From Octopus sinensis (lineage: Eukaryota): a stretch of 64,000 nucleotides of DNA. The stretch is from assembly GCF_006345805.1 (NCBI RefSeq), contig NC_042999.1, positions 46,438,001-46,502,000 on the forward strand, read 5' to 3'. Within the stretch, counting starts at the first letter, position 1. Every line of letters begins with the position of its first letter. The notes below the pieces were generated by a model, which made no database searches, was not told the DNA's origin, and worked only from the letters and a program-made list of their open reading frames with translations. Both the position numbers and the translations under genes were made by a program. Shown piece by piece: positions 7,745 to 59,439 of this stretch.

Positions 7745-8078
7745 GTATGTATAAAGCCATCTTCTTTTCGCATTGATTAAATATACAACTATATTTCATC
7801 AGCTTTAAATCTATTTAAACGAATCTATTTATCTCAAAATAAATAAATAGACAAATAGACAAATAAATAAATAAATAAATATAATCCTATCTGCTACAGG
7901 GTACAATGCCTGTAATTTTGTGGGTAGAGGCATAGTCGATTAAATTAACCCAACTAGTACTTATTTTATCGACCCCTAAAGGATGAAAGGCACAGTAGAC
8001 TTCAGCTGAATTTGAAATCAGATGAAATACAACTAATCATTCCGTCCGGCTTGCAAACAATTTTGCTTGCTCGCCGCC

Positions 8079-8119
<41 letters not shown>

Positions 8120-8550
8120 CCTTTCTACTAAAGGCACAAGGCCTAACATTTTTGGGGGAGAGGACTAGTCGATTACGTCTAGTGCTTAACTAGTACTTAA
8201 TTTATCGACCTCGAAAGGATAAAAGGCGAAGTCGGCAGTCGTGGAATTTGAACTAAGAACGTAAGGACAGACGAAATACCTATTTCTTTATTACCCACAA
8301 GGGGCTACACACAGAGGGGACAAACAAGGACAGACATAGGTATTAAGTCGATTACATCGACCCCAGTGCGTAACTGGTACTTTATTTATCGACCCCGAGA
8401 GGATGAAAGGCAAAGTCGACCCCGGCGGAAATTGAACTCAGAACGTAACGACAGACGAAATACCGCTAAGTATTTCGTCCGGCGCGCTAACGTTTCTGCC
8501 AGCTCGCCGCTAAGCATTCTGCCCGACATGCTAACGATTTTGCCAACTCA
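8120..8550 (-). mobile_element. SINE family B: young X-tailed copy (8281-8508) nested in an older copy (8120-8280 plus 8509-8550)
   Basis: The host reads ...aatgcttagc | ggtatttcg... and is split exactly by a near-consensus copy ending aataaagaaata. The host carries a different tail, ending in (ATT)n. Confidence 0.8.
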
Positions 8551-9391: not shown

Positions 9392-10917
9392 CCTTAGCTT
9401 ACAATTTCTTTCAACAATTGACAACTGATGTACGCTCGCAAATTAATACTACCAAAACTTAGCGACAGAAAGTAAATTAAAAACCAATTGACCTTTTCTG
9501 TTGAGTTATGATGGCAATTCGACCGTCTGATTTCCTTAAATCCGTCTCTTTTCTTCAACTGAACTTACTTCATATCGTTTCTTAAAGTCCTTTGTGAAAT
9601 GTAGGAGTGTTTTGTTTTGTTCTTTCTCGAGAAACTTTTGTTTCCTCAACACTAAAAACTAACGGGAAGTAGACAACAGCCCCAGTACAATTGGTGTAAT
9701 AGTGTAACTCATAATGTGAGCGGCTATATGTGTTACGAACACGTATGCTCTAGCTTGGTCTTGGCCATAATAGTTTTCACGCTGTGTTAAAAGAGAATGG
9801 ATGCCCTATGTAGGCAAGAGGGGAATGAAGCATGGGTAAGTAAATATGGGTAATTTATAAGATATAGAACAATAGCATCTACTCACCATACGTCAGTTAA
9901 TTGTTGGTGTGTGTTTGCAAATGTGTTCGAATGAGAAAGTGAATTGTGTTTGGCGCCTTTTTTACTAATAACAAACACACACGTGTGTATGTGTTTGAGT
10001 GTTTGTATGTAGTTGTTTGAAACGTTTGTGTTTGTCACTGTCATATATGTATATGTTTGCGTGTCTATGTGTGTGTGAAGAGTAAATCGTTATGTATTTA
10101 TTTTGTTCTGTTTCCTTTTTCTTTTGAGGAGTGGTTTGCAAAGAGAAAGTAGATGTATATGTTTGCGTGTCTATGTGTGTTTGTGAGGAGTAAATCGTTA
10201 TGTATTCATTTTTTCTCTGTTTCCTCTCTGTATTGTTTTTGAGTAGTGGTTTAAGGTACACTTGCAAAGAGAAAGTAGGAGAAAGTGTGGTAATAGAAGG
10301 AGTAAAGCATTTGAAATGAGAGAGGCAAATCGTAAAATATTGAGTTTTATCGAATTTTTGCTTAACTGGGGGTCAAATTGAAAGAAATTTATTCGCCATG
10401 ACCCAATGGAATCTACTTCGAAAAATCATAGGTAAATTCCAATTGAAGAAATTCTATATATGTGTGTGAGGAGTAAATCGTTATGTATTAATTTTTTTTC
10501 TGTTTGCTCTCTTTGTTTTTTTTGAGGAGTGGTTTGCAAAGGGAAAGTAGATGTATGTGTTTGCGTGTGTATGTGTGTGTGTGAGTAGTAAATCGTTATG
10601 TATTTATTTTTTCTCTGTTTCCTCTCTGTATTTTTTTTGAGTAGTGGTTTAAGGTACACTTGCAAAGAGAAAGTAGGAGAAAGTGTGGTAATAGAAGGAG
10701 TAAAGCAGTTGAACTGAGAGAGGCAAATCGTAAAATATTGAGTTTTATCGAATTTTTGCTTAATTGGGAGTCAAATTGAAAGAAATTTATTTGCCATGAC
10801 CCAATGGAATCTACTTCGAAAAATCATAGGTAAATTCCAATTGAAGAAATTCTATATTGTACAATTGTATTAAAAACAAACATAGTCACAGACAGAAAAT
10901 CTGCCTTTTATAGTATA
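9170..10917 (-). mobile_element. Probable Helitron family 2 with internal minisatellites; partial relatives at ~12640-12916 and ~14290-14750
   Basis: Shared 5' end (TC)TCTTATTATAAAAGGCAGATTTT. Internal tandem duplication of ~370 bp and ~120-bp subrepeats. The 3' CTAG end was not identified. Confidence 0.55.
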
Positions 10918-11554
10918 CTAGCAGTATCGCCCGGCGTTGCTCGGGTTTGTAAGGGAAATAACTATATAAGCATTTTTAGAGAGTTATAGCCCCAAAATAG
11001 CAAAAAATGCATTAAAAATGGAAAAAATATGATGGTAAATTTTTTTTTAAATCGTTGACTCATCGTAGACATTTTTAGAGAGTTACTTCCCTTATATAAT
11101 AGCGAAAAAATGCATTAAAATGGAATAAAAAATGATGTTAAATTATTTTTAAAATCGTAGACTCATGTAGACGCTTTCTTAGCCATTTCTGTTTTGGTGT
11201 CTTCAAGCCATGAAGTCGTTGTTCTAAAAGAACGCTGGTCTCCTTGACAACGCATTACGACGTTGATTTCCTTACACTCTCTCCCCACAGGTGCAGGTGT
11301 GAGCGTGGACGCCAACTCCGCCGCCATCGACACACGAAAAATTATGCATTAAAATGGAATAAAAAATGATGTTAAATTATTTTTAAAATCGTAGACTCAT
11401 CGTAGACGCGCGCTAATACCCAGACGGGCTCGATATGAATCACGACTATAAGCTACCCGAATTTGGTTAAACTGCACCGCAAAATGTGGGAGTAGTTAGG
11501 AATCTAAATCGAAGGGGACAGACACTCACACAACTACAGTTTTATATATATAGA
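10918..11554 (-). mobile_element. Non-autonomous Helitron, family 1
   Basis: Same termini and much of the interior of 34211-34723, in reverse orientation. Confidence 0.85.
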
Positions 11555-11589
11555 TATACATAGCGCAGTAGTGGTGAGATGTGACAGCA

Positions 11590-12005
11590 AAGAAAAACAT
11601 ACATTCACTCTCTGCATGCAATTAGACTCGGAAAGTTCGTGAGGAACCCATTGACCCAATTTGCTGACTTTTCCGATAGCACACAGGTCTCAATGAATGG
11701 TTGAATGACCAAATCCAAGCTTCTCTGCTAGTTCCTCAACAGTTACGATGAGATTTTGTTCCACCAGGGTTTTCAAGATGTCCTTGTCGAGTTCTACAGA
11801 TCTTTCAGGATGAGGCTCGTCTTCTAGGCTGTTCCAATATAGCTTTGAAAAAAATAGCTGTTAAAATCGAAATGCACTCTTCAAAACTTGCACTATGAAT
11901 AAGGACAAGATAAAATTACTACCTGCTTTTATAGCAAGTTAATATAAGTAGTTTATCCCATTCCCCTCTGACTTTTAGTTCAAGCTGTTGAAAAAACCTC
12001 ATTAT
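11590..12005 (-). mobile_element. mariner transposase remnant (N-terminal)
   Basis: EDEPHPER...VEELAEKLGFGHSTIH..IGKVSKLGQWVPHEL, containing the mariner WVPHEL motif. Confidence 0.8.
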
Positions 12006-12937
12006 TATATATATACATACATACATCATACATACATACATATACACACACACTCTCTCTCTCACACACATGCACATATTTATATTCTGTTATTCTTTTA
12101 TATGTTTCAGCCTTGAGGTTGTGGCCATGCTGGATCATGTGTGTGTGTGTGTGTGTCTATCTGTCTGTCTGTCTGTATGTCTATATGTATATGTATGTGT
12201 GTGAACAATAATATTTTCAACAGATGTGTTGCAAATGTATCTGATTGTTCTCAAGCTTCAATACTGTGTGTGTGTGTATGTGTGTGTGTGTGTATGTATG
12301 TATATGTATGTATGTATATGTATGTATGTATGTATGTGTGTATGTATGTATGTGTGTGTGTATGTATGTATATGTGTGTGTATGTGTGTGTGTGTGCATG
12401 TATGTATGTATGTATGTATGTATGTATGTATGTATGTATGTATGTATGTAGTATGTATGTATGAGTGTATGTTACTTATTACTAACACAAGCCACTACGG
12501 TTATTTAATGTAAAGTCTTCCTCAAATCACTCTCTCTGGCTATTTACTCTCTTCCAAGAACATTTTCACACTCACTCTTATGTGTTAGCTTCCCATACAT
12601 TTTACTCATGTATCTATCAGCGTGATAGAGAGAAACAATATTACATCTAGTTTCACTTTATTCGTTGCACACTGTGTGTGTGCGTTTGCGTGTGCTGTAA
12701 ACCAGACTAAGAAAAGCATTTGACACACACACCAGAATGTGAGTTTTCTGTAAATTTTGCTTAATTGGAGTTTAAATTTTAAAAACTGGACCTGGCATGA
12801 CGCGATGCATTGTACTCTTAAAAATGCTAGGTAAATTGTATTGAAGAAATCCTATATTGTAGATTTGTATAACTCCCAAAGGGAGGCAGATAAAATCTGC
12901 CTTTTATAATAAGAGATTGATATATATATATATAATA

Positions 12938-13798: not shown

Positions 13799-16700
13799 TG
13801 TATGTATGTATGTGTGTATATGTGTATGCATGTATGTGTGTGTGTGCGTGTCTGTGCTTGTGATTGTCCTCCACCACTGCTTGACAACGAATGTTGGTTT
13901 GTTTACATCCCTGTCACCTAGTGGTTTGACAAAGGAAACAGATAGAATAAGTACAATGCTTACAAAACTAAAACTGGAGTTGATTCATTAAACTACAATT
14001 CTTCAAGGCATTGCCCCAGCATGGCCACAGAGCAATGGCTGGAAAAAGCAGAAGAATAAAAGAATTGAGGGGGACCTCTACATGGTAGCTAGACCTGGTA
14101 GAAATAGCAGCAAAATTTCCCCCAAATCACACCTTACTGTCTTATCTATGTATATATGTATGTATGAGCCTATGAGGGAGACCCCTACATGGCAGCTAGA
14201 CATGGTAGAAATAGCAGCCAAATCTCCCTCAAATCACACCTTACTGTCTTATCTTTCTGCTACTTGGATATAGGTGTTTAATTCGTCTAAAAAAAACTTT
14301 CCTGTCACACACTCACGCACCCGCACACACACACCAGCACCGTCACACAACACACGCGCACATACACACACACTCACACACACGCACGTTAGCTTACAAT
14401 TTTATTTATATATTTGCGTGTGTATGTGTGGAAAGAAGAAGTGGGAGCAGAGTGAAAGAATCACTCACTACAGTAGTGAATTAGTTTCATTTTATTCGTT
14501 GCCCACTGTGTGTGTGCGTTTGCGTGTGGTGTAAACCAGACTAAGAAAAGCATTTGACACCACACCAGAATGTGAGTTTTCTGTAAATTTTGCTTAATTG
14601 GAGTTTAAATTTAAAAAACTGGACCTGGCATGACGCGATGCATTGTACTCTCAAAACTGCTAGGTAAATTGTAATTGAAGAAATCCTATATTGTAGATTT
14701 GTATAACTCCCAAAGGGAGGCAGATAAAATCTGCCTTTTATAATAAGAGATATATATGCGAGGTTCATTTGCATCTGTTGTTGTCCACCGTTACTATTTG
14801 ACAACCGACACTGCTTTGATTACGTTCCCGTTACTCAGCAGCTTGGCAAAGAGGCCAATAGAATAAGTACAAGACTTAGCAAAAATAAGTACCGGTTGGA
14901 CTCAGGAACATTATATTGTTGGATATAATGTCAGGCTAATATTTTTGTCGGTATTTATGATATGACAACTTCAGGATCGAAATTTTAAGTACAACCTTCA
15001 GCCTGCAGAATGCTTCTATTATAACAATTACTACATGAAGTATTTCTAAAATTTTTAATTAAAAAAATACTAAAAAACCCATTGTTCATTGGTTGAACAT
15101 AATTTTTGTTGCAATGTCGTCCTTCTTTTTATAAGTCACAGATAGAATATATTCGTAAAATTTGCTTTTTAATTTGTAAAGACTGAATAGATCCAGCTGC
15201 GTGAAAAAAAATTGTCCTTACAAATCAAATGCTGGTGTTATCCATTGAATAATTCGTCTCCAAACGATTTCATGTGAAAAGCGCAATTGCAATCTTGAAT
15301 GATTTACAAGAACAGTTTCTATTTCTAACTGATACTCCAAAGGCTAGTCGTAAGTTCTAGTATATAAATTATAAGCAAATGGATATTAGAACAAGACATG
15401 CTTAATGTTTCAATTCCTAGCAGCACAATTGCTAATATAAGTATAAAGCCAAAGGATACCATATTTTCATATGCATAATTATGATTAGAATGATAATCAA
15501 ACTCTTAAATTCTACGTTTTGGCTTTTTGCACTAAGTTGTGTCCATTTTCTTGCTGTATGCTATTTTTGAAGTTTCATTTCTTTGTCTTGCCTGGAATGT
15601 TTTATATTTCTATAGTAATTTCTCATTGTCAGTGGTATTATTCATCTTTATCACATTCTTTTACTCTTTTAATACCTCACTGTTCCTCATTTTTAGCAAT
15701 CTTATTTTTATATCTTGTTCTGATATTTTTTATTTTCACGTTCACTTATTACTCTCTTTTTCATCGTCACACGATGTTTCTCTTCCAGTATATTTCTTAC
15801 ATATTTATTAATGTTTATGCAAAAGAGAGCATCGTAGTAGCCGTTATCAGTTTGATCATTATATCATACAGTTATGGTTATTCACATAAACACCCGATCA
15901 CTTAGGTTCATCATTAGCAGTTGAGCGCTTTTGGGAGCAATAATATTCTCATCATATTATCATGAAGCTGAATTGCTACATTGTATGATTTACTAACGGT
16001 AAAAAAACTCAACATTACCGGTGCGTATTGTATCTCTAGTCTTGAATGTTTAATATTTTCTGTATTGCGTTTCTAAAAATATATAAATGAAAACTCCAAT
16101 ATGCGTAGAGGACTTAATACCTTTACCGTCAAAAAGTGATAAAGATGTACACAGACAGTTGTTGTCCTCCATAATTGTTTTTAAATGCAATCTATTCAAG
16201 AAATAAGTGAATTATTCATTGATTTTAATAAAGTAGTTTACCTTTTATTTAGAATTTAGAAGGTCTATTTGCGAATAGTACCTAGATTAATACTTTCAGC
16301 ATTCACGAATGACAACGTTCTATCCTCGGTCCTCAACCGAGGTCCATATGGCCTCTACGGGTCCATATAAGATTTTGGGGGTCCATGCAACAAAATGGTA
16401 AATTGGGGATTGACAATAATATTTTAAGGGCCACTGAAAAAAATTTGTCGTATATGTATGTATTGGTATGCATTTAAAAAAACAGCTAGGCTTCTTTCTC
16501 TAACATTTTACATTGTCTAATCTACACAAGTGAATGCGTAATGAACATAGAATGATTTTGAAAGAAATATCTATAAAATTAGTTTTTACACATAGAATGG
16601 TTATGGGGGTCCACCAGAATAAAATAATAATCAAAGGGATCCATAAACAATAAAAAAAATGGCTGAGGTTTAAAATTTGAAAGGCGGAAATAATTTGGTT

Positions 16701-17899: not shown

Positions 17900-17902
17900 T
17901 CT

Positions 17903-17935
<33 letters not shown>

Positions 17936-17948
17936 TATTATATATATA

Positions 17949-17980
<32 letters not shown>

Positions 17981-18041
17981 GTATATATATGTATGTATAT
18001 ATATATGTATATATATGTTTGTGTATATATGTGTATGTATG

Positions 18042-18073
<32 letters not shown>

Positions 18074-18074
18074 C

Positions 18075-18119
<45 letters not shown>

Positions 18120-18128
18120 CATACATAT

Positions 18129-18173
<45 letters not shown>

Positions 18174-18219
18174 TATATATATATAATATATATATATTGT
18201 ATATAAATGTAAATATGTG

Positions 18220-18251
<32 letters not shown>

Positions 18252-18270
18252 ATATAATATATATATTATA
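17900..18270. repeat. Compound (TA)n/(TATG)n/(TACA)n microsatellite; similar tracts at ~7100-7200, 12136-12470, 30770-30960, 36920-37290, 52480-52790, 53520-53910
   Basis: Direct reading. Confidence 0.95.
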
Positions 18271-18811: not shown

Positions 18812-18842
<31 letters not shown>

Positions 18843-18843
<1 letters not shown>

Positions 18844-21800
18844 AGAAGTTTTCTTGGGAACGTCTCGTCCTTTACTCTTAGTGGGGGATTGGAATGCTAC
18901 CTTGGACACGCATGTAGACTACGTGGGTAGAGATAGGAATAGACGGGGATGCAAATGCCTCAGAGACCTGCTCAGACGCTTTCAACTGTCTGACAGGTTT
19001 CGACTAGACCACCCGAATGCGCCAACGTGGACATGGAGCAACCGCATCGGGTCGTCGAGATCGTATCTAGATAGGATACTGTGTAGGACAGTAGATAGAG
19101 ATAGCATAGGATGTCCACAATTCCACATAGTCAGCTACACGGATCACAAACTTGTGACATGTACGCTAGACTTAGGTAAGACACTTAGGCAGGGTCCCGA
19201 TACTGGAAACTAAACGCGTCTTTCCCATCGAGACAAGTTTTCAGAGACCGGATTAGCACACTAGTAAGAGGGCTTTGACGGGAGCCATCATCAACAACAA
19301 ATGGTGGTTTGCCCTCAAGAGAGCAGTAAAAGCAGAAGCGATTAGGTACAGCAAAGCACTAGCCATAGATAGAAATAGAGTAAGGGTGAGCTAGTTAAGA
19401 AGCTAGAAGAGGCAATTAGAAGCGGCATCGCGCATCCGACGTTTTGGCGGCGAGGTTGGCCCTCGACCAACACTTCAACGCCAAACACGAAGGATGTGCT
19501 GTCAGAGCTAGGATGCGTGCTCTAAGGAACGAAGGTGTTGGAGCCGCGAGAGAGGCCCGGGTGGCAGAGGCGCAACAGGGCAACAAAGCCACCATTCGGT
19601 CACTGGTAGATGAACAGGGGCGCGAATTGCTCGAGCCAAGTAAAATGTGTGAGGCCTTTCAGCAGCATTTTGCCCGACTGTTCGGAACGAGTGGAGGGCA
19701 AGAACGTAGGGTGGACTTCAGTGCCTACCTACTACCTACCCCACCACGACTCTCGACAAGAAAGGCAGGGTGCTGCGAAGGTGCCATCACGGCGGCGGAA
19801 GTGCGGGAAGCGATGGCAGAATGCTCGAGGGACAAATCACCGGGTTTGGATGGTCTACCCTACGAGCTTTACAATTGTATGCCAGACTTGTTTGGAGATC
19901 TCTTGGCGGCGGTGTACTGCAACTGGCAGCAAAACGGGAGCATTCCTGGTTTTGTGAGCCGAGGAGCCGTAACACTGCTGAAGAAAGATCTAAACAAGGG
20001 AAATGTAATAGATAACTTTAGGCCCATCACTCTGCTTAATGCAGACTTGAAAATTTTGGCCAAGGTGCTAGCCAAGAGGTTGGCGCTTGTCATCGAGAAA
20101 CTGGTCGACAAGGCGCAAACATGCGCCGTGCCAGGCCGGACCATCCATGACAACCTCCATCTGATGCGCTACATCATAGACAGGGTAGTTAACGAACCTG
20201 GCATGGGTGGGGCCCTGATCAACTTGGATCAATCAAAAGCCTTTGATAGGGTAGACCATCGATACTTGGAGGCAGTCCTGAGAGCGGCTGGTTTCGGTCC
20301 CGTCTTCCGCGGCTGGATAGCTGCCTTGTACAGAGGCATCCGTTCGGTAATTCGCGTAAATGGACATCTATCGAGACCTTTCGACATTGCACGTTCGGTC
20401 CGTCAGGGATGCCCCCTCTCGGCGCTTCTATACGTATTGACTCTTGAGCCACTACTGCGGAAGCTGGCGACTCTAAGGGGCATCCCGCGAGAATTGGGAT
20501 GCGGGACGAGCGTGTCTGCATACGCGGACGACGTCACCGTCATAGTGTCTAGCCACGAGCACACATCGAGCTGGTCGGCGAGACACTGAAAACTACGAAG
20601 CGGTGACAGGAGCGAAAATCAACCGGGAAAGTCAGTGGGCTTGCGACTAGGCACCTGGAGAAGCAAGCCCATGCCGTCCACCAGCGCCTCCGTCGTGGGA
20701 CGCTGGACCGACGGCCCGGTTGAGTTGCTCAGGGTCTGGTTTGGTCCGGACCTCCAAGTGGAGAAGAACTGGAACGAGATAACGAGTAGGGTGGTCACTC
20801 TCGCCCGGCAATGGGCCGAGAGGAAACTGTCCCTAAAAGGTCGAGCGGAGGTGGCGAACACGTACATCGCGTCCGTCATCTACTACCGCCTGACCGTCGT
20901 ACCTTGTCCCGACCCTACCATCACCAAACTACAACGCATCCTCTTTCGCTTCTTGTGGAAAGGATGCGTCCCGATGGTCAGGCGATCCATTTGCTGTCAA
21001 CACCCGTTAAAGGAGGGCTGGGCATGCCGTGGTTGATGATGCGCAGACACGCGCTGAGACTGCGACATCTCTGGCTCTATGTAGACGACGGTGAACAGGT
21101 GTGGTCGCCGTTTGTAAGGCACGCTTTCCCGCAGCTCGTCTCCATGACCGAACTGCAGTCGTGGATCAAAAGAGGTGAGGAAGGGCGAATGGCACCGCGA
21201 GTGTCGCGTTGCTCTCAAGCAACTCTGCCGTCCTGGGTCGACCTTAAGTGACTTCAACACAACCAAGCATTCTATAGGGGTTTAGTGGAGGGGAGGTACG
21301 ACGACGAGCTCGGGGCGAACCTGGACGTCGACGAGAGTACCTGACCCGCCTGTTCGGGACGACTTTCGGGCCAGGGCCCATGGACAATTTCCAGAGATCC
21401 CTGGCCTGGCAGTGCTACCGAGAAGCGCTACCCGTTCGGGATAAGCTCTACAGACACGGCTCGAGAAACACGGGGCCGACCTGCCCGAGATGCGGTCAGA
21501 GCGACGAAACCGTTCTGCACGCACTCGTTCAGTGTCCAACAATTTCCGACCTGTGGGCTTATGTCGAACAACTGCTGTCACGTGTGGACGAGTCGGTTTA
21601 TCAGCTGAGTCTATCGTCAATATTGTCACGCCTCCTTCCTTCAAACGGGAAGGAAGAGCTATTTTCATCATCCTTGTGGCTATGGCGAAAGAATGTATCT
21701 GGTGGACGCGTCTGAAAGGATTGGAGACAAACACTTTCCTCTCTGGTCAATCTCTCATCAACTTCTTCAAGTACCACTTGAAAAGGAAAGTGAGAGTAGA

Positions 21801-22292
21801 GAGGCAAGTTTTGTCTAGCGAATGTTTAAAAAAAGATGGGTGAATGTAGCAAGAATGGGACGTATGAATGACGAAGCACCTTGAGCTAGTCCTATGAACC
21901 CAGAAATCGAAAACAGAGAGTTGCTTATTTGCAAAAAAAAAAAAAAAAAAAAAAAAATATAAAATGTGACTTCATTGACCGAGGTTACCGTGGTCTTTTC
22001 CGCAGGCTTTTCTTTCCACGGGTAAACCTCACCTGTCCTCCCCTTTACACTTCATATTGACATTTCTGTGATAACGATCCCTATTGATCATTTTTTTTTC
22101 CTCTCCCCCCCCTTTTTTTTTTTAACCCCCCTTATTTTTGTCCTCTTTCTCTCCTTTTACGATCCCTTTTGATCGAACCTCCCCCTTCCTTTTTTTTTTT
22201 TTTTTTTTTTTTTTAATACCTTCAAAAGAAAAGCTCTACTACCTGTAATTTGTTCTATCTGTGTGCAGCCCTGTGTGGCTAATAAAGAAACA
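18843..22292 (+). mobile_element. Tx1/L1-clade non-LTR retrotransposon, copy 1 (5'-truncated inside the APE endonuclease)
   Basis: EN motifs LLLVGDWN, YLDRIL, TDHKLV. RT motifs KSPGLDG, NFRPITLLNAD, LDQSKAFDRV, VRQGCPLS, YADD. C-terminal CPRC...H...C knuckle. The 3' UTR has A/T/C tracts and ends AATAAAGAAACA. Several 1-nt frameshifts. (TATC)n on both sides. Confidence 0.93.
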
Positions 22293-22382
22293 TATCTATC
22301 TATCTATCTATCTATCTAGCTATCTATCTATCTATATATCTATCTATCTATCTATCCATCCATCCATCTATCTATCTATCTC

Positions 22383-22454
<72 letters not shown>

Positions 22455-22926
22455 CCTGTTTCTTTACTACCCACAAGGGGCAAAACACAGAGAGGACAAA
22501 CAAAGACCGACAAACAGATTAAGTCGATTTATTTGACCTCTTGCGTAACTGGTACTTAATTAATCGACCCCGAAAGGATGAAAGGCAAAGTCGACCTCGG
22601 CGGAATTTGAACTCAGAACGTAACGGCAGACGAAATACGGCTACGCATTTCGCCCGGCGTGCTAACGTTTCTGCCAGCTCGCCGCCTTACCTCCCTACAA
22701 ACCTACCTACCAACCTACCTACCTACCTACCTACCTACCTACCTACCTACCTACCTTCCTATCTACCTACCTACCTACCTACCTACCTACCTACCTAACT
22801 TCCTACCTACCTACCTACCTACCTACCTCCCTACTACCTACCTACTTACCTACCTATCTATCTATCTACCGCTGATGTCAGAAGTATTTTATAAACTTTC
22901 CAGAGAATGTAAAGTATACATCAAAC

Positions 22927-23002
<76 letters not shown>

Positions 23003-24087: not shown

Positions 24088-24088
<1 letters not shown>

Positions 24089-26961
24089 CCGACGTTTTGG
24101 CGGCGAGGTTGGCCCTCGACCAACACTTCAACGCCAAACACGAAGGATGTGCTGTCAGAGCTAGGATGCGTGCTCTAAGGAACGAGGTGTTGGAGCCGCG
24201 AGAGAGGCCCGGGTGGCAGGGCGCAACAGGGCAACAAAGCCACCATTCGGTCACTGGTAGATGAACAGGGGCGCGAATTGCTCGAGCCAAGTAAAATGTG
24301 TGAGGCCTTTCAGCAGCATTTTGCCCGACTGTTCGGAACGAGTGGAGGGCAAGAACGTAGGGTGGACTTCAGTGCCTACCTACATAGCCTACCACGACTC
24401 TCGACAAGAAAGGCAGGGTGCTGCGAAGGTGCCATCACGGCGGCGGAAGTGCGGGAAGCGATGGCAGAATGCTCGAGGGACAAATCACCGGGTTTGGATG
24501 GTCTACCCTACGAGCTTTACAATTGTATGCCAGACTTGTTTGGAGATCTCTTGGCGGCGGTGTACTGCAACTGGCAGCAAAACGGGAGCATTCCTGGTTT
24601 TGTGAGCCGAGGAGCCGTAACACTGCTGGAAGAAAGATCTAAACAAGGGAAATGTAATAGATAACTTTAGGCCCATCACTCTGCTTAATGCAGACTTGAA
24701 AATTTTGGCCAAGGTGCTAGCCAAGAGGTTGGCTTGTCATCGAGAAACTGGTCGACAAGGCGCAAACATGCGCCGTGCCAGGCCGGACCATCCATGACAA
24801 CCTCCATCTGATGCGCTACATCATAGACAGGGTAGTTAAAGAACCTGGCATGGGTGGGGCCCTGATCAACTTGGATCAATCGAAAGCCTTTGATAGGGTA
24901 GACCATCGATACTTGGAGGCAGTCCTGAGAGCGGCTGGTTTCGGTCCCGTCTTCCGCGGCTGGATAGCTGCCTTGTACAGAGGCATCCGTTCGGTAATTC
25001 GCGTAAATGGACATCTATCAAGACCTTTCGACATTGCACGTTCGGTCCGTCAGGGATGCCCCCTCTCGGCGCTTCTATACGTATTGACTCTTGAGCCACT
25101 ACTGCGGAAGCTGGCGACTCTAAGGGGCATCCCGCGAGAATTGGGATGCGGGACGAGCGTGTCTGCATACGCGGACGACGTCACCGTCATAGTGTCTAGC
25201 CACGAGCACATCGAGCGGGTCGGCGAGACACTGAAAAACTACGAAGCGGTGACAGGAGCGAAAATCAACCGGAAAAAGTCAGTGGGCTTGCGACTAGGCA
25301 CCTGGAGAAGCAAGCCCATGCCGTCCACCAGCGCCTCCGTCGTGGGACGCTGGACCGACGGCCGGTTGAGTTGCTCGGGGTCTTGTTGGTCCGGACCTCC
25401 AAGTGGAGAAGAACTGGAACGAGATAACGAGTAGGGTGGTCACTCTCGCCCGGCAATGGGCCGAGAGGAAACTGTCCCTAAAAGGTCGAGCGGAGGTGGC
25501 GAACACGTACATCGCGTCCGTCATCTACTACCGCCTGACCGTCGTACCTTGTCCCGACCCTACCATCACCAAACTACAACGCATCCTCTTTCGCTTCTTG
25601 TGGAAAGGATGCGTCCCGATGGTCAGGCGATCCATTTGCTGTCAACACCCGTTAAAAGGAGGGCTGGGCATGCCGTGGTTGATGATGCGCAGACACGCGC
25701 TGAGACTGCGACATCTCTGGCTCTATGTAGACGACGGTGAACAGGTGTGGTCGCCGTTTGTGAGGCACGCTTTCCCGCAGCTCGTCTCCATGACCGAATT
25801 GCAGTCGTGGATCAAAAAGAGGCCGAGGAAGGGCGAATGGCACCGCGAGTGTCGCGTTGCTCTCAAGCAACTCTGCCGTCCTGGGTCGACCTTAAGTGAC
25901 TTCAACACAACCAAAGCATTCTATAGGGGTTTAGTGGAGGGGAGGTACGACGACGAGCTCGGGGCGAACCTGGACGTCGACGAGGAGTACCTGACCCGCC
26001 TGTTCGGGACGACTTTCGGGCCAGGGCCCATGGACAACTTCCAGAGATCGCTGGCCTGGCAGTGCTACCGAGAAGCGCTACCCGTTCGGGATAAGCTCTA
26101 CAGACACGGCTCGAGAAACACGGGGCCGACCTGCCCGAGATGCGGTCAGAGCGACGAAACCGTTCTGCACGCACTCGTTCAGTGTCCAACAATTTCCGAC
26201 CTGTGGGCTTATGTCGAACAACTGCTGTCACGTGGGGACGAGTCGGTTTATCAGCTGAGTCTATCGTCAATATTGTCACGCCTCCTTCCTTCAAACGGGA
26301 AGGAAGAGCTATTTTCATCATCCTTGTGGCTATGGCGAAAGAATGTATCTGGTGGACGCGTCTGAAAGGATTGGAGACAAACACTTTCCTCTCTGGTCAA
26401 TCTCTCATCAACTTCTTCAAGTACCACTTGAAAAGGAAAGTGAGAGTAGAGAGGCAAGTTTTGTCTAGCGAATGTTTTAAAAAAAGATGGGTGAATGTAG
26501 CAAGAATGGCACGTATGAATGACGAAGCCACCTTGAGCATAGTCCTATGAACCCAGAAATCGAAAACAGAGAGTTGCTTATTTGCAAAAAAAAAAAAAAA
26601 AAAAGAAATATAAAATGTGACTTCATGACCGAGGTTACCGTGGTCTTTTCCGTAGGCTTTTCTTTCCACGGGTAAACCTCACCTGTCCTCCCCTTTACAC
26701 TTCATATTGACATTTCTGTGATAACGATCCCTATTGATCAATTTTTTTTTCCTCTCCCCCTTTTTTTTTTTTTTAACCCCCCTTTTTTTTGTCCTCTTTC
26801 TCTCCTTTTACGATCCCTTTTGATCGAAACTCCCCCTTCCTTTTTTTTTTTTATTTTTTTATTTTTATTTTTTAATTTTTTTTTTTAAACCTTCAAAAGA
26901 AAAGCTCTACCTTGTAATTTGTTCTATCTGTGTGCAGCCCTGTGTGGCTAATAAAGAAACA
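24088..26961 (+). mobile_element. Tx1/L1-clade non-LTR retrotransposon, copy 2 (more deeply 5'-truncated)
   Basis: Near-identical to copy 1 from copy-1 position ~19435 to the same 3' end. Same RT and knuckle motifs. (TATC)n on both sides. Confidence 0.93.
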
Positions 26962-38851: not shown

Positions 38852-39082
38852 AAGGCGGCGAGCTGGCAGAATCGTTAGCATGCCGGGCGAAATGCTTAGC
38901 GGTATTTCGATTGCTGTTACGTTCTGAGTTCAAATTCCGCTGCGGTCGACTTTGCCTTTCATCCTTTCGAGGTCGATAAATTAAGTACCAGTTACGCACT
39001 TGGGTCGATGTAATCGACTTAATACCTTTGTCTGTCCTTGTTTGTTCCCTCTATGTTTAGCCCTCTATGGGCAATAAAAAAA
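38852..39082 (+). mobile_element. SINE family B copy with X tail
   Basis: aaggcggcgagctggcagaatcg...gagttcaaattcc...agccc..tatgggcaataaa. Confidence 0.85.
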
Positions 39083-39508: not shown

Positions 39509-40151
39509 CCTGAGATAGTTCTTGACTGTTGAGTCGAAAACTATCTGTTTATGATGCCAACCTCTTACCCAGTAACAAATGATTTATAAAGAAAATACAA
39601 TGATTAAATGAGATACGATGGTTGAGATGTTGGGTGTCTTAGGGAATGATATTTCTAATACAGCGAATGAATGGTTTGAGATTTCACTGGTTAGAGACAA
39701 AATAACATGTATCGAACACCATAGTGTAGAGTCAGAGCAATCTGCTCTGTGAGAGCGCAATATGAAGGTTGGTTTCCATACGTAACTATTCCAGCGGCAA
39801 GAAATATCAATCGATTTCCCCTAAAAATGATATATATAATCTAAAATATGAAGTCCTATTCCAATAAAAGATTCTATAGTCCCGATTAGAACACATTTGG
39901 CTATATATCTATGGTGTTGGTCTACTAACAACTACAAGAAAAACTAAGGGGTTTTTAGCTTTTAAAAGGTGATACTTCGGACGTCTTTTGAACGAAAAAA
40001 AGAGAATAACTCAGTCTAAATACATCGAGAAACATTTGACTCAAACGTGAGGTAGAGTTTATCAGGATGTATGACCTTAGAAATATGTACATCTTTTATA
40101 TCACATGTACGAATCATTTTGATAAGGCAGTTGTTGGTATAAAGAGATGAA

Positions 40152-40610
40152 CGGCGGCGAGCTGGCAGAAACGTTAGCACGCCGGGCGAAATGCGGCGGC
40201 GAGCTGGCAGAAACGTTAGCACGTCCGGCGAAATGCTTAGCGGTATTTCGGCTGCCGTTACGTTGTGAGTTCAAATTCCGCCGAGGTCGACTTTGCCTTT
40301 CATCCTTTCTGGGTCGATAAAATTTAAGTACCAGTTACGCACTGGGGTCGATATAATCGACTTAATACCTATGTCTGTCCTTGTTTGTCCCCTCTGTGTT
40401 TAGCCCCTTGTGGGTAATAAAGAAATAGGTATTTCGACTGCGTTACGTTGTGAGTTCAAATTCCGCCTCGGTCGACTTTGCCTTTCATCCTTTCGGGGTC
40501 GATAAATTAAGTACCAGTTACGCACTGGGGTCGATGTAATCGACTTAATACCTATGTCTGTCCTTGTTTGTCCGCTCTGTGTTTAGCCCCTTGTGGGTAA
40601 TAAAGAAATA
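40152..40610 (+). mobile_element. SINE family B nested pair with 16-bp target-site duplication
   Basis: Direct repeat ggtataaagagatgaa at 40136-40151 and 40611-40626. Inside: host head 40152-40194, full copy ~40195-40427, host remainder resuming at ggtatttcg (40428). Confidence 0.85.
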
Positions 40611-47220: not shown

Positions 47221-49479
47221 ATGTGCTTATCATGAGAAGAAGAACAATTAGGATAAATTCGAACTTGCTTAGTAATGTTGATAGAATACTACTGTCTATC
47301 CTACATCAGCTCGGAAGAATAGGAGATAAGTAGTTTGGTAGTTAGGGTGTTGCACTCACGATCGCGAGATTATGTGTTCGATTCCCGGACCGGGCAGTGT
47401 GTTGAGTTCTTGAATAAAACACTTCATTTCACGTAGCTCTGCGATAACTTCGACATGTGACGTGTGGCCTACTGTGCACCTGTGCAGTTAATATGGATTT
47501 GATGGAGAGAGAGAGAGAGTTAATTACTTTTCTAGATGTTGTAAATTTACTTTGCAATATTCCTAAGCTTCCGCTAACTTTTGTTTTGTACTTTTTTTGT
47601 ACTTCAATGAATAAAGAATAATATCGAGAGATGGTATTTACCCATACTTTAATGTGGATGTTCTATTAGGACAAGCTATACTGCGGTAGATACCATGAAA
47701 GAAACTCTCATATTCGCTTTTGGTTTAAAATGCACTTTTGTTTATCTCCCCTATTTATCTCTTATCTTCTCGCTTGCAATATCAACAAGAGTGTATTTTG
47801 CACGAAAACCAACATGATAGTTTTCCTCCTAGTATCTGCTGCAGTATAGTTTGTCCTAATAAAACATCCACGATTAAATATTACCACTAGGTATCAACAC
47901 TGCCTTTGTCGCTAACATATAAATAATGATATCACTTTCTGTGTTCTCATGTTTCCTAATGTGACAAAACTAAAAACTATAAATAAAAACGCACATTTAA
48001 GCAGGGGCTTAGAAATATTGCAAGTGAATTAATTTGTTAAGGTTCATATTATAATAAAAATGTAAATTCTAAAAGTTGACTAAAGGTAAATAATAAAAAA
48101 ATGCCAGTGAGAAACCCGGGATGAAGGAAAAAAATTCCAATAAAACAGCTGCAGCTGACTTGAATGACGCCACTCAGAAAGCAGTACAATAAATATTAGT
48201 CGAGCAGTTTGAGGCAGAATAAGTTTTGATTATATTTATCTTCTAGAGAAATACTTTGAGCATACCGCAAATCATGGATAATCGCTAGATGAGCTTGACG
48301 ATCCCATGACGAACCACGCCCCAGGTGGCCAGTTAGAGCATACCACAAGTCTTCACAACGATCAAGCCCCGGATGCTCTTGGCGCTACCATGAATAACCA
48401 AGTATCAGATGGCCATCTTGGTTGGACGTCGGTACTTGCGGTCTCTTTAGCCTAGTTTTTTGCTGCTGTTGCCGCATTCATACATGTTGGTTAGCAGGGG
48501 AAAGATAGAAAAATGAGAAGAGCAGCAAATATTTATGTAAAAATTTTTTAAATTTAGCAAACAGAAACAAAAAAAAATGTTTATAAAAGGTATACAATTT
48601 AAAACAAAAACATTTTTGAATTGATTTATTACATTGGTGTTCATATGCAAATAATCATTTTAAAAATCATTTAAATAAAATAATAAATGTACTTTCATAT
48701 AATACATTTGGCAATGATAAATTTAGTTTAATTAATTTATCAAATTTTGATATATTTCCATATCATTTTGAGTATTATTTAGTTATTTGTAATTTTGAAT
48801 AATTAATTATACTTGAATAAATAATTATTTCATTGTGATGTAAATTAAAATTTTGGTTTAAACGAAAACATGTCTAAACATTTCGGGACTAGCGCTTCCT
48901 ATGGGACATTAAATAATATTTTTCGAAATATATTCCACGGAAGTCGACTTTGCTTTTCATCCTTTCGGGGTCGATAAATTAAGTACCAGTTGCGTACTGG
49001 GGTTGATCTAATCGACTGGCCCTTTCCCCAAAATTTAGAGTAGAAAAGAAAAAAAAAGAAAGAATATTTTTCTAAATATATATTTAAAACTTTATTTGCC
49101 ACCATTTTGGTTTTGATATTGTTTATTTCGCCTCTGTTTCATATAAAATATATAACATAAATTCAAATTTACAAACGGAATACAACCTAAAAGACAGATT
49201 GATAATAATTATAAATACATGCTTAAATAAATAATAAAGCGAGAAAACTTCGCCCTCCATGTGGTTTGAACTCACAATAGCAGCATACACCTCGACTTGC
49301 GAAAAAATTAAAGGAAGTGCTGTCGATAGGTACTGCGCGGAAACCGATTGTGTGCTACCGGGAAATTCACATTATAAAATTTAATTTGAATAATATCTAT
49401 AAACACACACAAACATGCTGTTTCTTTATTACCCACGAGGGGCTACACAGAGGGGACACTACAAACATGCATGCATGCT

Positions 49480-57351: not shown

Positions 57352-57580
57352 ACGGCGAGCTGGCACAAACGTTAGCACGCAAGGTGAAATGTGTAGCGGT
57401 ATTGCGTCTGGCATTACATTCTGAGTTCAAATTCCGCCGAGGTCAACTTTGCCTTTCATCCTTTCGGGGTCGATAAATTAAGTACCAATTACGCACTGGG
57501 GTCGATGTAATCGACTTAATCCGTTTGTCTGTGCTTGTTTGTCCCCTCTGTGTTTAGCCCCTTGTGGGTAGTAAAGAAAT
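57352..57580 (+). mobile_element. SINE family B copy with X tail (further B copies at ~57160-57310 -, 57640-57995 -, 48940-49040 +, 7880-8080 -)
   Basis: Same head, body and tail motifs as the other B copies. Confidence 0.8.
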
Positions 57581-58364
57581 AGAAATATATATAATGGCTC
57601 AAACTTTTGGCAGAAAGCCAGCAATTTTAGCGGTAGGGTTAAAGACGAGAACATCAATCCTACGGTTCAACTGATACTTACTTTATCGACCCCGAAAGGA
57701 TAAAAAGCGAATACAACCTTGGGTGTATTTGAACTCAGAATGTGAAGAAAGAAAAATACACGGAAGCATTTTTTTTGCTTGTCGTGCAAACGATACTTAT
57801 TTCTTTATTGCAGGAGAGACAAAGGAATTAAACCGATTATATCGACCCCAGTGCGTAACTGGTACTTATTCAATCGATCCCGAAAGGATGAAAGGGAAAG
57901 TCGACCTCGGCAGAATTTGAACTCAGAACGTTATGGCAGACGAAATACTGCTAAGCATTTCGCCTGGCGTGCAAACGATTCTGCCAGCTCGCTGACTTAA
58001 AGAAGTGAAATATGATGAAAATATTTGCTCCTTACTAAATAGATTTTGAACAGTAAAGACAAAGTTCAGACATATTATTTATAAGAAATCTGTTTGAACT
58101 GAGACCACTCATCTAGTATGATTAACTGATGTAAGTAAATGATTAATACATTATTTCTTACGGTCAGTTATATTCTGAGTTGTGATCGCATCGAGGTCAA
58201 TTTCGTTTTTCGTTGTTTTAAGTTCAATAAAATTAAGTACCGGTTAAGTCTTGAGGTCGTTATAATTAATAGGAACTATTCATTAAATTTCAGGCCTTTT
58301 GCCTATATTAGAAATGATTATTATCAAGAGTTGCTAAAATATTTTGCAATATGCTAGGGAATAA

Positions 58365-58745
58365 AGCGGCGAGCTGGCAGAATCGTTAGCACGCCGGGCG
58401 AAATGCCTAGCGGTATTTCATTTGCCGCTACGTTCTGAGTTCAAATTCCGCCGAGGTCGACTTTGCCTTTCATCCTTTCGGGGTTGATTAAACACTGTGG
58501 TCGATATAATCCAGTTAATCAGTTTGTTTGTCCTTGTTTGTCCTCTCTGTGTTTAGCCCCTTGTGGGTAGTAAAGAAATAGGTATTTTGTCTGTCTTTAT
58601 GTTCTGAGGTCAAATTCCGCCGAGGTCAACTGTGCCTTTCATTCTTTCAGGGTCGATAAATTAAGTTCTAGTTGCATACTGGGGTCAATCTAATGGGCTG
58701 GATCCGTCCCCCAAAATTTCGGGCCGTGTACATATAGTAGAAAAG
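58365..58745 (+). mobile_element. SINE family B: X-tailed copy (58365-58580) followed by the remainder of an older copy starting ggtattttg
   Basis: Junction taaagaaata|ggtattttgtctg at 58580/58581. Possible decayed host head at ~58328-58364. Additional decayed B copies at ~58150-58320, 58760-58940 and 59085-59280. Confidence 0.75.
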
Positions 58746-59439
58746 AATATTTTTGGGATGAATTGTAGAATGGTCTGAACATTGGTCAACATGCCTTGCG
58801 GTATTTGCTGCTGCTCTATACATTCTGAGTTTAAATCGCCGAGGCCAATTTTGTTTTCCTTCCTTTCGGGGCCGACAAAATAAAGAAGTCCCAGTCAAAT
58901 ACTGCGAACAATGGTATCGATTAAACCTCTTCCCTTAAATTTCAAGTCTTGTTCTTTTATCAGAAATTACTTAGAACATTGGAGGCTCTAGAGCTTTAAG
59001 AGTGCTTTTAAGTACTGGAGTGGATGTTATCAATTAATCACATCCCTTGAAAATTGCTGGCCTTGGAACATAATAAGAAACAATTGTAAGTATGGTGGAC
59101 TGGCAGAATCGTTTGTACATCGGGTAAAATGCTTTCTGGCATATTTCTTCAGGCTCTTAGCATTCTGAGTACAAAGCTCACCGGGGTGGACTTTGCTTTT
59201 CGGGTCGATAAAATAAGGTACCAATCAAATACTACGCCAAATGGCATCGGCAACCGCTCTCCCTCAAAACTACTAGCCTTCTGTGTAAAACAGAAACCAT
59301 TATTATGGTTCCTGATTCAGGCACAAAGCCAGCAATTTTGAGAGAAGAAAATTAGGTGATTCCTTCGATTCCAGTACTTGGCATGTACAGTATTTCATCA
59401 ACAGCGAATGGATGAAATGTATTTTACAACTACCTTGGG

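What the first reader, a model, noticed from the sequence alone, without database searches (positions are those of the whole stretch)
8120..8550. Self-targeting SINE: young copies insert at GGTA, repeatedly at the same site inside their own family
Seen: at 8120-8550 (-) an older SINE-B is split exactly at aatgcttagc|ggtatttcg by a younger copy. At 40152-40610 the same site is split again (head duplicated, 5 nt lost) in a different host type. At 58580/58581 a copy again abuts ggtattttg, with a possible decayed head upstream. Outside SINEs, the 3' junction is also GGTA at 40610/40611 (the 16-bp TSD begins GGTA) and at 22457 (GGTA on both sides). Exceptions: 39082, 57580 and 49420. Known: Tx1-group endonucleases can be sequence-specific (Kibi, Koshi, Keno). 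Inference: this SINE borrows a GGTA-cutting Tx1 endonuclease, and its own head contains the target, so older copies act as landing pads for new ones.
Basis: partly seen in the sequence, partly recalled or inferred. Interest (0 to 1): 0.8.

Follow-up and report, generated by a model that had tools for sequence, protein, structure and literature searches.

The report
SINE that inserts into SINE heads
A short retrotransposon in this cephalopod (probably octopus) sequence prefers to land just before the bases GGTA, and because its own front end contains that site, new copies have landed at exactly the same base inside older copies at least three times; the pattern is real and tidy, but it is a variant of behaviour already known for Alu and for Tx1-driven SINEs.

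Summary
A tail-less SINE of about 231 nt ("SINE-A", ending ..GTGGGTARTAAAGAAAYA) has nine independent insertions in the window. Three sit at the same base of another SINE's head (..CTTAGC^GGTATTTCG, model position 47/48). They are in the host's orientation, in three different hosts, and have three different 5' junctions. Two more have GGTA at the 3' junction: one is inside a 16-bp TSD and one is in a (GGTA)n array. Counting one extra copy from a metagenome contig, 5 of 10 junctions are GGTA against a background of 0.0026 (P about 3e-11). Most exceptions are near-cognate (GTTAT, AGTAT, AATAT).

The SINE tail matches an L1/Tx1-like LINE (APE, RT and zf-RVT domains). That LINE has two copies here and two in Argonauta hians, all abutting (TATC)n, so it comes from a target-specific lineage.

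"Borrows a GGTA-cutting Tx1 endonuclease" is not shown. The only LINE seen with this tail targets (TATC)n, Tx1 placement was not testable, and no genome-wide test was possible.

Precedents exist: the Alu self-insertion hotspot, and SINEU sharing a target with Tx1-Mar. I rate this a new variant of a known kind, of moderate interest.

The parts
8509..8549 (-). Head (model positions about 7-47) of the older host SINE with an (ATT)n tail. It ends ..aatgcttagc at the insertion point.
8281..8508 (-). Inserted SINE-A copy, complete from GGCGAGC.. to ..GTGGGTAATAAAGAAATA. It is 4.8% diverged from the consensus. There is no TSD and no target loss.
8100..8280 (-). Body and (ATT)n tail of the same host SINE. 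It starts GGTATTTCG.
40136..40151 (+). 5' copy of the 16-bp target-site duplication GGTATAAAGAGATGAA that flanks the outer SINE-A. The 3' copy is at 40611-40626. This shows that GGTA belonged to the target and not to the element.
40153..40194 (+). Head of the outer (host) SINE-A. It ends ..gaaatgc; the next 5 host bases (ttagc) are missing.
40195..40427 (+). Inner SINE-A copy, full length and 3.0% diverged.
40428..40610 (+). Body of the outer SINE-A, starting GGTATTTCG. It is 2.7% diverged and 95% identical to the inner body.
58325..58367 (+). Decayed head of an old host SINE, ending ..aataaagc.
58368..58580 (+). Inserted SINE-A copy, 8.8% diverged, with a 17-nt internal deletion.
58581..58756 (+). 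Body of the old host SINE, starting GGTATTTTG.
22457..22686 (-). SINE-A inserted in a (GGTA)n array, with 3' junction AAACA|GGTA(GATA)n. It was later triplicated together with its flanks; the other two copies are at 23005-23235 and 23542-23771.
38854..39082 (+). SINE-A copy at a non-GGTA site. The flank is GTTATTTTA, or TATTTTA, because the junction is ambiguous.
57352..57581 (+). SINE-A copy at a non-GGTA site with a TSD of about 23 bp (57327-57350 and 57582-57604). The target reads AAA|GAAATA, which is identical to the element's own last 9 nt.
57798..57994 (-). SINE-A copy with an internal deletion. Its 3' end abuts AGTATCG.., which is position 15 of another SINE (57635-57797).
49419..49460 (-). 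A 42-nt fragment consisting only of the tail (..GTGGGTAATAAAGAAACA), with TSD GCATGTTTGT at 49461-49470 and 49409-49418. It is at a non-GGTA site.
18844..22292 (+). 5'-truncated L1/Tx1-like LINE (C-terminal part of the APE domain, RT, zinc-binding domain). It ends ..GTGGCTAATAAAGAAACA, the same tail type as the SINE, and has (CTAT)7 on its 5' side and (TATC)40 on its 3' side.
24088..26961 (+). Second copy of the same LINE, 96.6% identical to the first, with a different 5' truncation point. It is also flanked on both sides by (TATC)n.

Best explanation
SINE-A is a non-autonomous retrotransposon without an A-tail. It is copied by target-primed reverse transcription, using the proteins of an L1/Tx1-like LINE that recognises the shared 3' tail (..GTGG[G/C]TARTAAAGAAAYA).

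The first (bottom-strand) nick falls preferentially after 5'-(A)TACC-3', which on the element's strand is immediately 5' of GGTA(T). The best site is an extended sequence found in the head of this SINE and its sister families, GC^GGTATTT(C/T)G at position 47/48, between the A-box-like and B-box-like promoter motifs. Every SINE head that keeps GGTAT is therefore a landing pad.

A new copy enters in the host's orientation. The 3' junction is invariant. The 5' junction varies: flush at 8508, 5 nt lost at 40195. The host's promoter halves are pushed 231 nt apart.

Shown: the junction anatomy, the non-random GGTA, the independence of the three nested events, the shared tail, and the domain content and (TATC)n association of the LINE.

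Inferred: that the specificity lies in the endonuclease of an as yet unseen LINE subfamily, and that splitting the promoter inactivates the host copy.
For: - Five of 10 independent 3' junctions are GGTA, against a background of 0.0026 (P = 3e-11).
- In the 16-bp TSD case, GGTA lies inside the duplicated target.
- The five exceptions match GGTAT at 15 of 25 positions. Only 55 of 200,000 random draws do as well.
- Three nested insertions share the 3' junction but have different hosts (two old (ATT)n-tailed copies and one SINE-A) and different 5' junctions.
- Of 10 heads that still read GGTAT at the site, 3 are occupied. Of 7 heads mutated there, 0 are occupied.
- The tail is shared with a LINE that has Exo_endo_phos, RVT_1 and zf-RVT domains. 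The LINE's RT is closest to human L1 ORF2p (E = 2e-30, versus 1e-19 for R2).
- That LINE lineage is target-associated in two octopod genomes. All 4 copies abut (TATC)n, and both window copies have it on both sides despite different truncation points.
- The Tx1 clade is known for target specificity, and for SINEs that share a Tx1 target, including sequential insertions at one site and 16-bp TSDs (PMC4494074).
Against: - No LINE with a GGTA target was found. The LINE carrying the related tail (34 of 42 nt identical) sits in (TATC)n, and the two nick contexts (GATA^ versus TACC^) are not alike.
- The sample is one 64-kb window plus one foreign contig, giving 10 junctions.
- Nested insertions show no TSD, while non-nested ones have TSDs of 10-23 bp. 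A single simple cleavage rule does not explain this.
- GGTAT alone does not account for the excess in SINE heads (P = 0.006).
- Tx1 clade membership was not tested.
Confidence: 0.6

Rival explanations
1. Homing guided by the RNA's 3' flank rather than by the endonuclease. SINE-A has no terminator of its own, so transcripts run into the flank. A master copy sitting in a SINE head makes RNA ending ..AAAUA-GGUAUUU(CG..). That extension pairs with the nicked bottom strand of other GGTATTT sites and positions reverse transcription exactly at the element's end. The same LINE protein would send LINE RNA, made from masters sitting in (TATC)n, to (TATC)n.
For: - The LINE and the SINE share a tail but have different, internally consistent 3' flanks: (TATC)n in 4 of 4 LINE copies and GGTA in 5 of 10 SINE junctions.
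- Similarity of targets to the head site extends past GGTA (GGTATTT three times, GGTAT, GTTATTTTA).
- The excess in heads goes beyond what GGTAT explains.
- The element ends only 6 nt after AATAAA and contains no T4 run. The first TTTT is about 60 nt into the host body.
- Annealing of read-through 3' flank to the target raises R2 retrotransposition efficiency (PMC6530143).
Against: - A nick must still be made at the right base, so some enzyme specificity is needed.
- The (GGTA)n and TSD cases share only 4-5 nt with the head site.
- No transcript data are available.
- The length of flank carried by the RNA is unknown.
Confidence: 0.2
2. The dimers are composite elements that arose once or a few times and were then copied as units, so the repeated site reflects ancestry and not repeated targeting.
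For: At 40153-40610 the inner and outer copies are equally diverged (3.0% vs 2.7%). They share a private substitution (cgttGtgag). The 16-bp TSD flanks the whole composite.
Against: - The three dimers have different host families, different host ages (hosts at 70-80% identity versus 95%) and different 5' junctions (flush; 5 nt lost). At least three founding events at the same base are still required.
- GGTA also marks two non-nested insertions.
Confidence: 0.07
3. The site in the SINE head is a fragile or structured spot that captures cDNA without a sequence-specific nick. For example, it lies in the loop of the CGAAAT..ATTTCG inverted repeat, or it breaks during transcription.
For: - Nested insertions lack TSDs (0 bp, or a 5-nt loss), as endonuclease-independent insertions do.
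- The site lies between 6-nt inverted repeats (read directly from the sequence).
Against: - The 3' ends are complete and the junction is precise to the base in all three cases.
- The same GGTA appears at two sites that have no such context.
- This idea does not explain the near-cognate exceptions.
Confidence: 0.05
4. Template switching of the reverse transcriptase from one SINE RNA to another created the chimeras in a single integration event.
For: The pair 57798-57994 / 57635-57797 (a full copy followed by a SINE that starts at position 15, with no separate head upstream) could be such a chimera.
Against: For the three head-site cases the host head is present upstream. That would need two precise switches, out and back, each time.
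Confidence: 0.03

Closest known systems
SINEU SINEs and Tx1-Mar LINEs of crocodilians (Kojima 2015, PMC4494074)
   Same: - SINEs with a strong target preference for a defined place in another repeat family, attributed to a target-specific Tx1-type LINE.
- Tandem or sequential insertions at one site.
- About 16-bp TSDs, with TSD, target truncation and flush junctions all seen.
   Different: - In SINEU the target is a Mariner DNA transposon, and the LINE demonstrably shares that target. Here the target lies in the SINE's own head, and the only LINE seen with the related tail sits in (TATC)n.
- SINEU have poly(A) tails; SINE-A has none.
- SINEU heads derive from snRNA; the SINE-A head has a tRNA-like box layout.
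Alu self-insertion hotspot in the human genome (Levy, Schwartz and Ast 2010, PMC2836564)
   Same: A SINE family whose copies carry a single predominant position at which further copies of the same family insert, so old copies act as landing pads.
   Different: The Alu hotspot is explained by a sub-optimal A/T-rich L1 endonuclease site together with poly(A)/poly(T) annealing at the internal A-rich linker. Here the site is GC^GGTAT, the element has no A-tail, and the nested insertions show no TSD.
Microsatellite-specific Tx1-clade LINEs (Kibi (TC)n, Koshi (TTC)n, crocodilian Tx1 in (TTCC)n/(TTTC)n; cited in PMC4494074)
   Same: The LINE at 18844-22292 and 24088-26961, and its Argonauta relatives, have APE + RT + C-terminal zinc-binding domains and are embedded in one specific tetranucleotide repeat.
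   Different: The repeat unit is (TATC)n, which I did not find among the targets named in that paper. Clade placement was not tested.
R2/R1 read-through-assisted target-primed reverse transcription (PMC6530143)
   Same: A precise 3' junction without an A-tail. Downstream target sequence carried on the RNA may assist positioning.
   Different: R2 uses a restriction-like endonuclease and a unique rDNA site. Nothing here shows that the flank is carried on the RNA.

Membership tests
SINE mobilised by a 'stringent' LINE partner (shared 3' tail) | The 3' end is homologous to the 3' end of a LINE in the same genome. | tested here: met
   The last ~42 nt of SINE-A match the ends of the LINE copies at 22249-22291 and 26911-26960 (83% identity). 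Eleven tail matches were found against 0.29 expected.
SINE mobilised by a 'stringent' LINE partner (shared 3' tail) | Head derived from a small RNA gene, with an internal pol III promoter. | tested here: inconclusive
   A B-box-like GAGTTCAAATTCC and an A-box-like TGGCAGAA are visible in the sequence. ARAGORN found no tRNA, and Rfam gave no tRNA match even at E <= 10.
SINE mobilised by a 'stringent' LINE partner (shared 3' tail) | Insertions flanked by target-site duplications. | tested here: met
   TSDs of 16 bp (40136/40611), about 23 bp (57327/57582) and 10 bp (49461/49409). The nested copies have none.
Tx1 clade of non-LTR retrotransposons (for the partner LINE) | APE endonuclease + reverse transcriptase + C-terminal zinc-binding domain. 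| tested here: met
   Exo_endo_phos, RVT_1 and zf-RVT in the window copies and in both Argonauta copies.
Tx1 clade of non-LTR retrotransposons (for the partner LINE) | RT domain groups with Tx1 reference elements in a phylogeny (RTClass1-type test). | not testable with these tools
   No Tx1 reference sequences were obtainable. The nearest solved structure is human L1 ORF2p (E = 2e-30, versus 1e-19 for R2). L1-like LINEs listed for molluscs and octopus are L1-Tx1 (PMC10294476, PMC13282606).
Tx1 clade of non-LTR retrotransposons (for the partner LINE) | Target-sequence preference (common in the clade but not universal). | tested here: met
   All 4 copies in two species are followed by (TATC)n. 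Both window copies also have it at differently truncated 5' ends.
Target-specific SINE that shares its target with its LINE (SINEU/Tx1-Mar type) | Non-random target of the SINE. | tested here: met
   GGTA at 5 of 10 junctions (P = 3e-11). The same head position was used three times.
Target-specific SINE that shares its target with its LINE (SINEU/Tx1-Mar type) | The partner LINE shows the same target. | tested here: not met
   The LINE copies with the related tail are in (TATC)n, not at GGTA or in SINE heads. A closer subfamily may exist elsewhere in the genome.
Alu-type self-insertion hotspot | One predominant position within the family's own sequence receives new copies of the family. | tested here: met
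   Three events at model position 47/48. One of them is SINE-A inside SINE-A.
Alu-type self-insertion hotspot | Hotspot explained by an A/T-rich L1 endonuclease site plus poly(A) annealing. | tested here: not met
   The site is GC^GGTAT, the element has no A-tail, and the nested copies have no TSD.

The most novel reading that the evidence does not exclude
Target choice is inherited from where the master copy sits rather than being hard-wired in the enzyme. Read-through RNA carries the master's 3' flank, which guides the nicked target to pair with it. One LINE protein then sends LINE RNA (masters in (TATC)n) to (TATC)n and SINE RNA (masters nested in SINE heads) to GGTATTT sites. A SINE that once lands in a sister's head would lock its descendants onto SINE heads. 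The family would then consume its own potential masters, because each hit splits a host promoter.
Probability: 0.15. Interest if true: 0.8.

Novelty: new variant of a known kind. Interest (0 to 1): 0.5.

Why it matters
SINEs make up about a tenth of octopus genomes (11.6% in O. vulgaris, PMC13282606), yet their insertion rules are essentially undescribed.

- A SINE with a G/C-containing target that lies within its own promoter region would explain the dense SINE nests seen here.
- It would act as a "safe-harbour" strategy, because insertions land in junk rather than in genes.
- It would give built-in self-limitation, because each nested hit separates the host's A and B boxes.
- The mismatch between the SINE's target (GGTA) and the target of the LINE with the related tail ((TATC)n) offers a natural test. 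It asks whether specificity in L1/Tx1-type elements lies in the endonuclease or in RNA-target pairing.
- A short, defined, strand-specific site with a base-precise 3' junction is also of practical interest for work on retrotransposon-based targeted insertion.

Tried and rejected
- **Metagenome scan for the tail.** A scan of metagenome contigs for GTGGSTARTAAAGAAAYA returned 120 loci. None contained the SINE; all were chance matches.
- **Protein search with the SINE's open reverse frame.** It found a single 543-bp contig, which yielded one extra junction (AATAT).
- **Exact-motif scans.** Scans of viral contigs and of bacterial/archaeal genome contigs found nothing.
- **Argonauta hians.** The locus fetched through the LINE protein has the LINE but no SINE-A.
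- **Origin of the head.** ARAGORN and Rfam did not identify a tRNA origin.
- **3' hairpin.** A small hairpin is predicted in the SINE, LINE and fragment tails, but it is no better than in shuffled sequence (z = -0.2 to -1.3). I do not claim it.
- **Literature.** Full-text sequence search found no paper containing the SINE sequence. Searches for octopus SINE target sites turned up nothing on this behaviour. The Tx1L endonuclease paper is not held.
- **Tandem duplication for 40153-40610 (rejected).** The order head-head-body-body would need two separate duplications.
- **GGTA as part of the element (rejected).** GGTA lies inside the 16-bp TSD and inside the host consensus.
- **The target at 40136 as an old tail fragment.** I considered that it is a decayed copy of the family's own tail (16 of 19 matches). 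The match is only marginal (3.3% of random windows).

Full report
**What the window is.** The sequence is AT-rich (about 35% GC) and dense in tRNA-like SINEs, LINE fragments and microsatellites. The closest named relative of its LINE reverse transcriptase is from the octopod Argonauta hians (56% amino-acid identity), followed by cuttlefish. It is therefore cephalopod DNA, very probably from an octopod. No assembly of the species itself could be reached. A metagenome scan gave only chance matches. A protein search with the SINE's open reverse frame found one 543-bp contig. Viral and prokaryotic collections had nothing. All quantitative statements therefore rest on this window plus that one extra copy.

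**The element.** I call it SINE-A. It is about 231 nt, starts GGCGGCGAGCTGGCAG, has a B-box-like GAGTTCAAATTCC at about position 73-85, and ends ..CCCCTTGTGGGTARTAAAGAAAYA with no A-tail or repeat tail. ARAGORN and Rfam do not recognise the head as a tRNA. Older sister families share positions 1-166 but carry other tails, for example (ATT)n. A profile search finds nine independent SINE-A insertions in the window. One of them is present three times because a ~540-bp unit containing it was later triplicated.

**Checking the observation.** On the minus strand at 8100-8549 the sequence reads host head ..gcagaatgcttagc | SINE-A (8508-8281) ..gtgggtaataaagaaata | ggtatttcgtctg.. host body, then an (ATT)n tail. 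When the two host parts are joined they align to the family model with no gap and no duplication at the site.

At 40136-40626 the order is TSD, one extra c, head (1-42), a full copy, body (48-231), TSD. Five host bases are lost at the 5' junction, and the 16-bp TSD GGTATAAAGAGATGAA lies on both sides. Tandem Repeats Finder reports the two bodies as a 183-nt repeat at 95% identity. However, head-head-body-body cannot come from one tandem duplication; it is the signature of a nested insertion.

At 58325-58756 a third SINE-A copy abuts GGTATTTTG of an old body. The 43 nt upstream align to the old-type head better than 99.7% of shuffles and 99% of random window segments.

The three 3' junctions are identical (AAATA|GGTATTT). 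The hosts and the 5' junctions differ. These are therefore at least three separate events at one phosphodiester bond, always in the host's orientation.

**Is GGTA more than chance?** GGTA occurs at 0.0026 of oriented positions outside the GGTA microsatellite. The ten independent 3' flanks are:
- GGTATTTCG (twice)
- GGTATTTTG
- GGTATAAAG (inside the TSD, so part of the target)
- GGTAGATAG (in a (GGTA)n array)
- GTTATTTTA
- GAAATATAT
- AGTATCGTT
- GCATGTTTG
- AATATATTA (contig L121)

Five or more GGTA in ten has P = 3e-11. Collapsing the nested cases to one gives P = 1e-6. The five exceptions still match GGTAT at 15 of 25 positions, which 55 of 200,000 random draws reach. The preference is therefore real and degenerate, as endonuclease preferences usually are.

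Two of the exception junctions are ambiguous by one or two bases (39082, 57581). At 57581 the target reads AAA|GAAATA, identical to the element's last nine bases, which suggests that microhomology can substitute for the motif.

**Is the SINE head special beyond GGTA?** The window holds 86 GGTAT sites, about 10 of them at the head position. Seventeen sites read GGTATTT, and about half of those are in heads. If only GGTAT mattered, three of four GGTAT insertions falling in heads would have P = 0.006. So either the preferred site is longer (GGTATTT or more) or something else favours heads. Of ten heads that keep GGTAT, three are occupied. Of seven heads mutated at the site (GCCGTAT, GTTGTAT, GCAGTAT and others), none is occupied. 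The nested insertions have no TSD (flush; 5 nt lost), whereas the non-nested ones have TSDs of 16, about 23 and 10 bp. I cannot explain this difference with one cleavage rule. It would fit a fully cognate site in the head, where both strands are cut at defined places, and half-sites elsewhere.

**The partner LINE.** Tail-only matches led to two LINE copies, at 18844-22292 and 24088-26961 on the plus strand. They are 96.6% identical, truncated at different 5' points, and end ..CTGTGTGGCTAATAAAGAAACA. They encode the C-terminal part of an APE endonuclease, RVT_1 and zf-RVT. The RT matches human L1 ORF2p at E = 2e-30 and R2 proteins at about 1e-19. Both copies have (TATC)n on both sides.

In Argonauta hians, two copies of the same lineage are only 67-70% identical to each other and have the same domain set. 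They end GTGGCTAATAAAGAAA(CA) and are again followed by (TATC)n. This LINE lineage is therefore tied to (TATC)n across octopods.

This is what the Tx1 clade is known for: microsatellites, snRNA genes and specific transposons as targets (PMC4494074). Surveys of molluscs and of O. vulgaris list L1-Tx1 as the L1-like LINE group present, with 13 recently active families in O. vulgaris (PMC10294476, PMC13282606). Direct placement in a tree was not possible, so "Tx1" remains a well-motivated inference.

The LINE seen here does not insert at GGTA. Its nick context (..GATA^ on the primer strand) differs from the SINE's (..ATACC^). There are two ways out.

(a) A sister LINE subfamily carrying the SINE's exact tail (GGGTAAT rather than GGCTAAT) has an endonuclease that prefers TACC^. 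Relatives within Tx1 often differ in target. I give this about 0.6.

(b) The enzyme is less selective, and the RNA's read-through 3' flank selects the target by pairing. The element has no terminator, and the first T4 run downstream of the 8281 copy lies about 60 nt into the host. Flank pairing is known to boost R2 insertion (PMC6530143). I give this about 0.2.

Option (b) would neatly explain why elements with the same tail have different but internally consistent flanks. It has no direct support here.

**Rivals for the nested structures.**
- Composite-master amplification cannot explain three different hosts and junctions. It could apply to the 40153-40610 dimer, whose halves are equally diverged (3.0% and 2.7%), share a private substitution and are enclosed by one TSD.
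- Template switching would need two exact jumps in each of the three cases, so I reject it for them. It may explain the pair at 57635-57994.
- Capture at a fragile or structured site fits the missing TSDs. It does not fit GGTA at unrelated sites.

**Comparison with what is known.** Two precedents lower the novelty. Human Alu elements have a single predominant hotspot for insertion of other Alus, about 19,000 cases, explained by an L1 endonuclease site next to the A-rich linker (PMC2836564). Crocodilian SINEU elements share a precise target in a Mariner transposon with Tx1-Mar LINEs, with sequential insertions at one site and 16-bp TSDs (PMC4494074).

What is new here:
- the target lies inside the SINE's own promoter region;
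- the site is G/C-containing and the element has no tail;
- the nested junctions are flush;
- the LINE with the related tail has a different target.

My literature searches found no description of this in cephalopods.

**Verdict.** This is a new variant of a known kind, with interest 0.5. The decisive work is a genome-wide flank logo, site-occupancy counts, junction clustering, empty-site alleles, identification of the exact partner LINE, and nicking and donor-flank assays.

Noticed in passing
window 22293-24090: A ~540-bp unit is present three times in tandem. It consists of (TATC)n, the reverse-complemented SINE-A, (TACC)n and a 60-bp unique stretch. It lies between the two LINE copies, so one SINE insertion is counted three times by any naive census.
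   Followed up: partly
window 18844-22292 and 24088-26961; L122 about 9650-12786 and about 13970-18858: An L1/Tx1-like LINE lineage abuts (TATC)n in all 4 copies across two octopod genomes, and the 18-nt 3' end is conserved. I did not see (TATC)n among the Tx1 targets named in PMC4494074.
   Followed up: partly
L122 12808-12965 and 18917-19074: In Argonauta hians the 158 bp following the (TATC)n run are 98.7% identical behind two LINE copies that are only 67-70% identical to each other. This suggests a repeated target element or local conversion. The stretch begins AGTATTTAC, which resembles the SINE's GGTATTT site.
   Followed up: no
window 40136-40630: The 16-bp TSD target reads GGTA-N12-TACC, an inverted repeat with the second nick just before TACC. 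With its upstream bases it also resembles the family's own tail (TTGTTGGT-ATAAAGAGAT versus TTGTGGGTAATAAAGAAAT, 16 of 19). This is marginal: 3.3% of random windows score as well.
   Followed up: partly
window 8281-8511, 40190-40200, 58365-58370 versus 40136/40611, 57327/57582, 49409/49461: Nested insertions have no target-site duplication (flush, or 5 nt lost), while insertions outside SINE heads have TSDs of 10-23 bp. This is unexplained.
   Followed up: partly
window 57320-57360 and 57575-57605: The target of the non-GGTA insertion at 57352-57581 contains AAAGAAATA, identical to the SINE's last 9 nt, straddling the nick. Microhomology with the RNA's 3' end is a possible alternative entry route.
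   Followed up: no
window 57150-59420: A 2.3-kb nest made almost entirely of SINEs of at least three tail types in both orientations. It includes tandem old-type copies in which a head follows directly on the previous copy's (ATT)n tail (also seen at 8078-8100).
   Followed up: partly
window 57635-57994 (-): A SINE-A copy with an internal deletion is joined directly to another SINE that starts at its position 15 (AGTATCG), with no separate host head upstream. This could be a nested insertion resolved through head homology or a template-switch chimera.
   Followed up: no
window 54614-55090 (-): An ORF with a GIY-YIG nuclease domain (E = 3e-7), as found at the C-terminus of Penelope-like retroelements.
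   Followed up: no
window 8440-8475 (-), and every SINE-A head: The insertion site lies in the 10-nt spacer of a 6-nt inverted repeat, CGAAAT-GCTTAGC^GGT-ATTTCG. After insertion, the junction GAAATA-GG-TATTTC is itself palindromic.
   Followed up: no
window 28581-28831; 17903-18270; 52473-52781; 53519-53912; 12267-12472: Other tandem arrays: a 67/130-bp minisatellite, long (TA)n tracts, and (TGTA)n.
   Followed up: no
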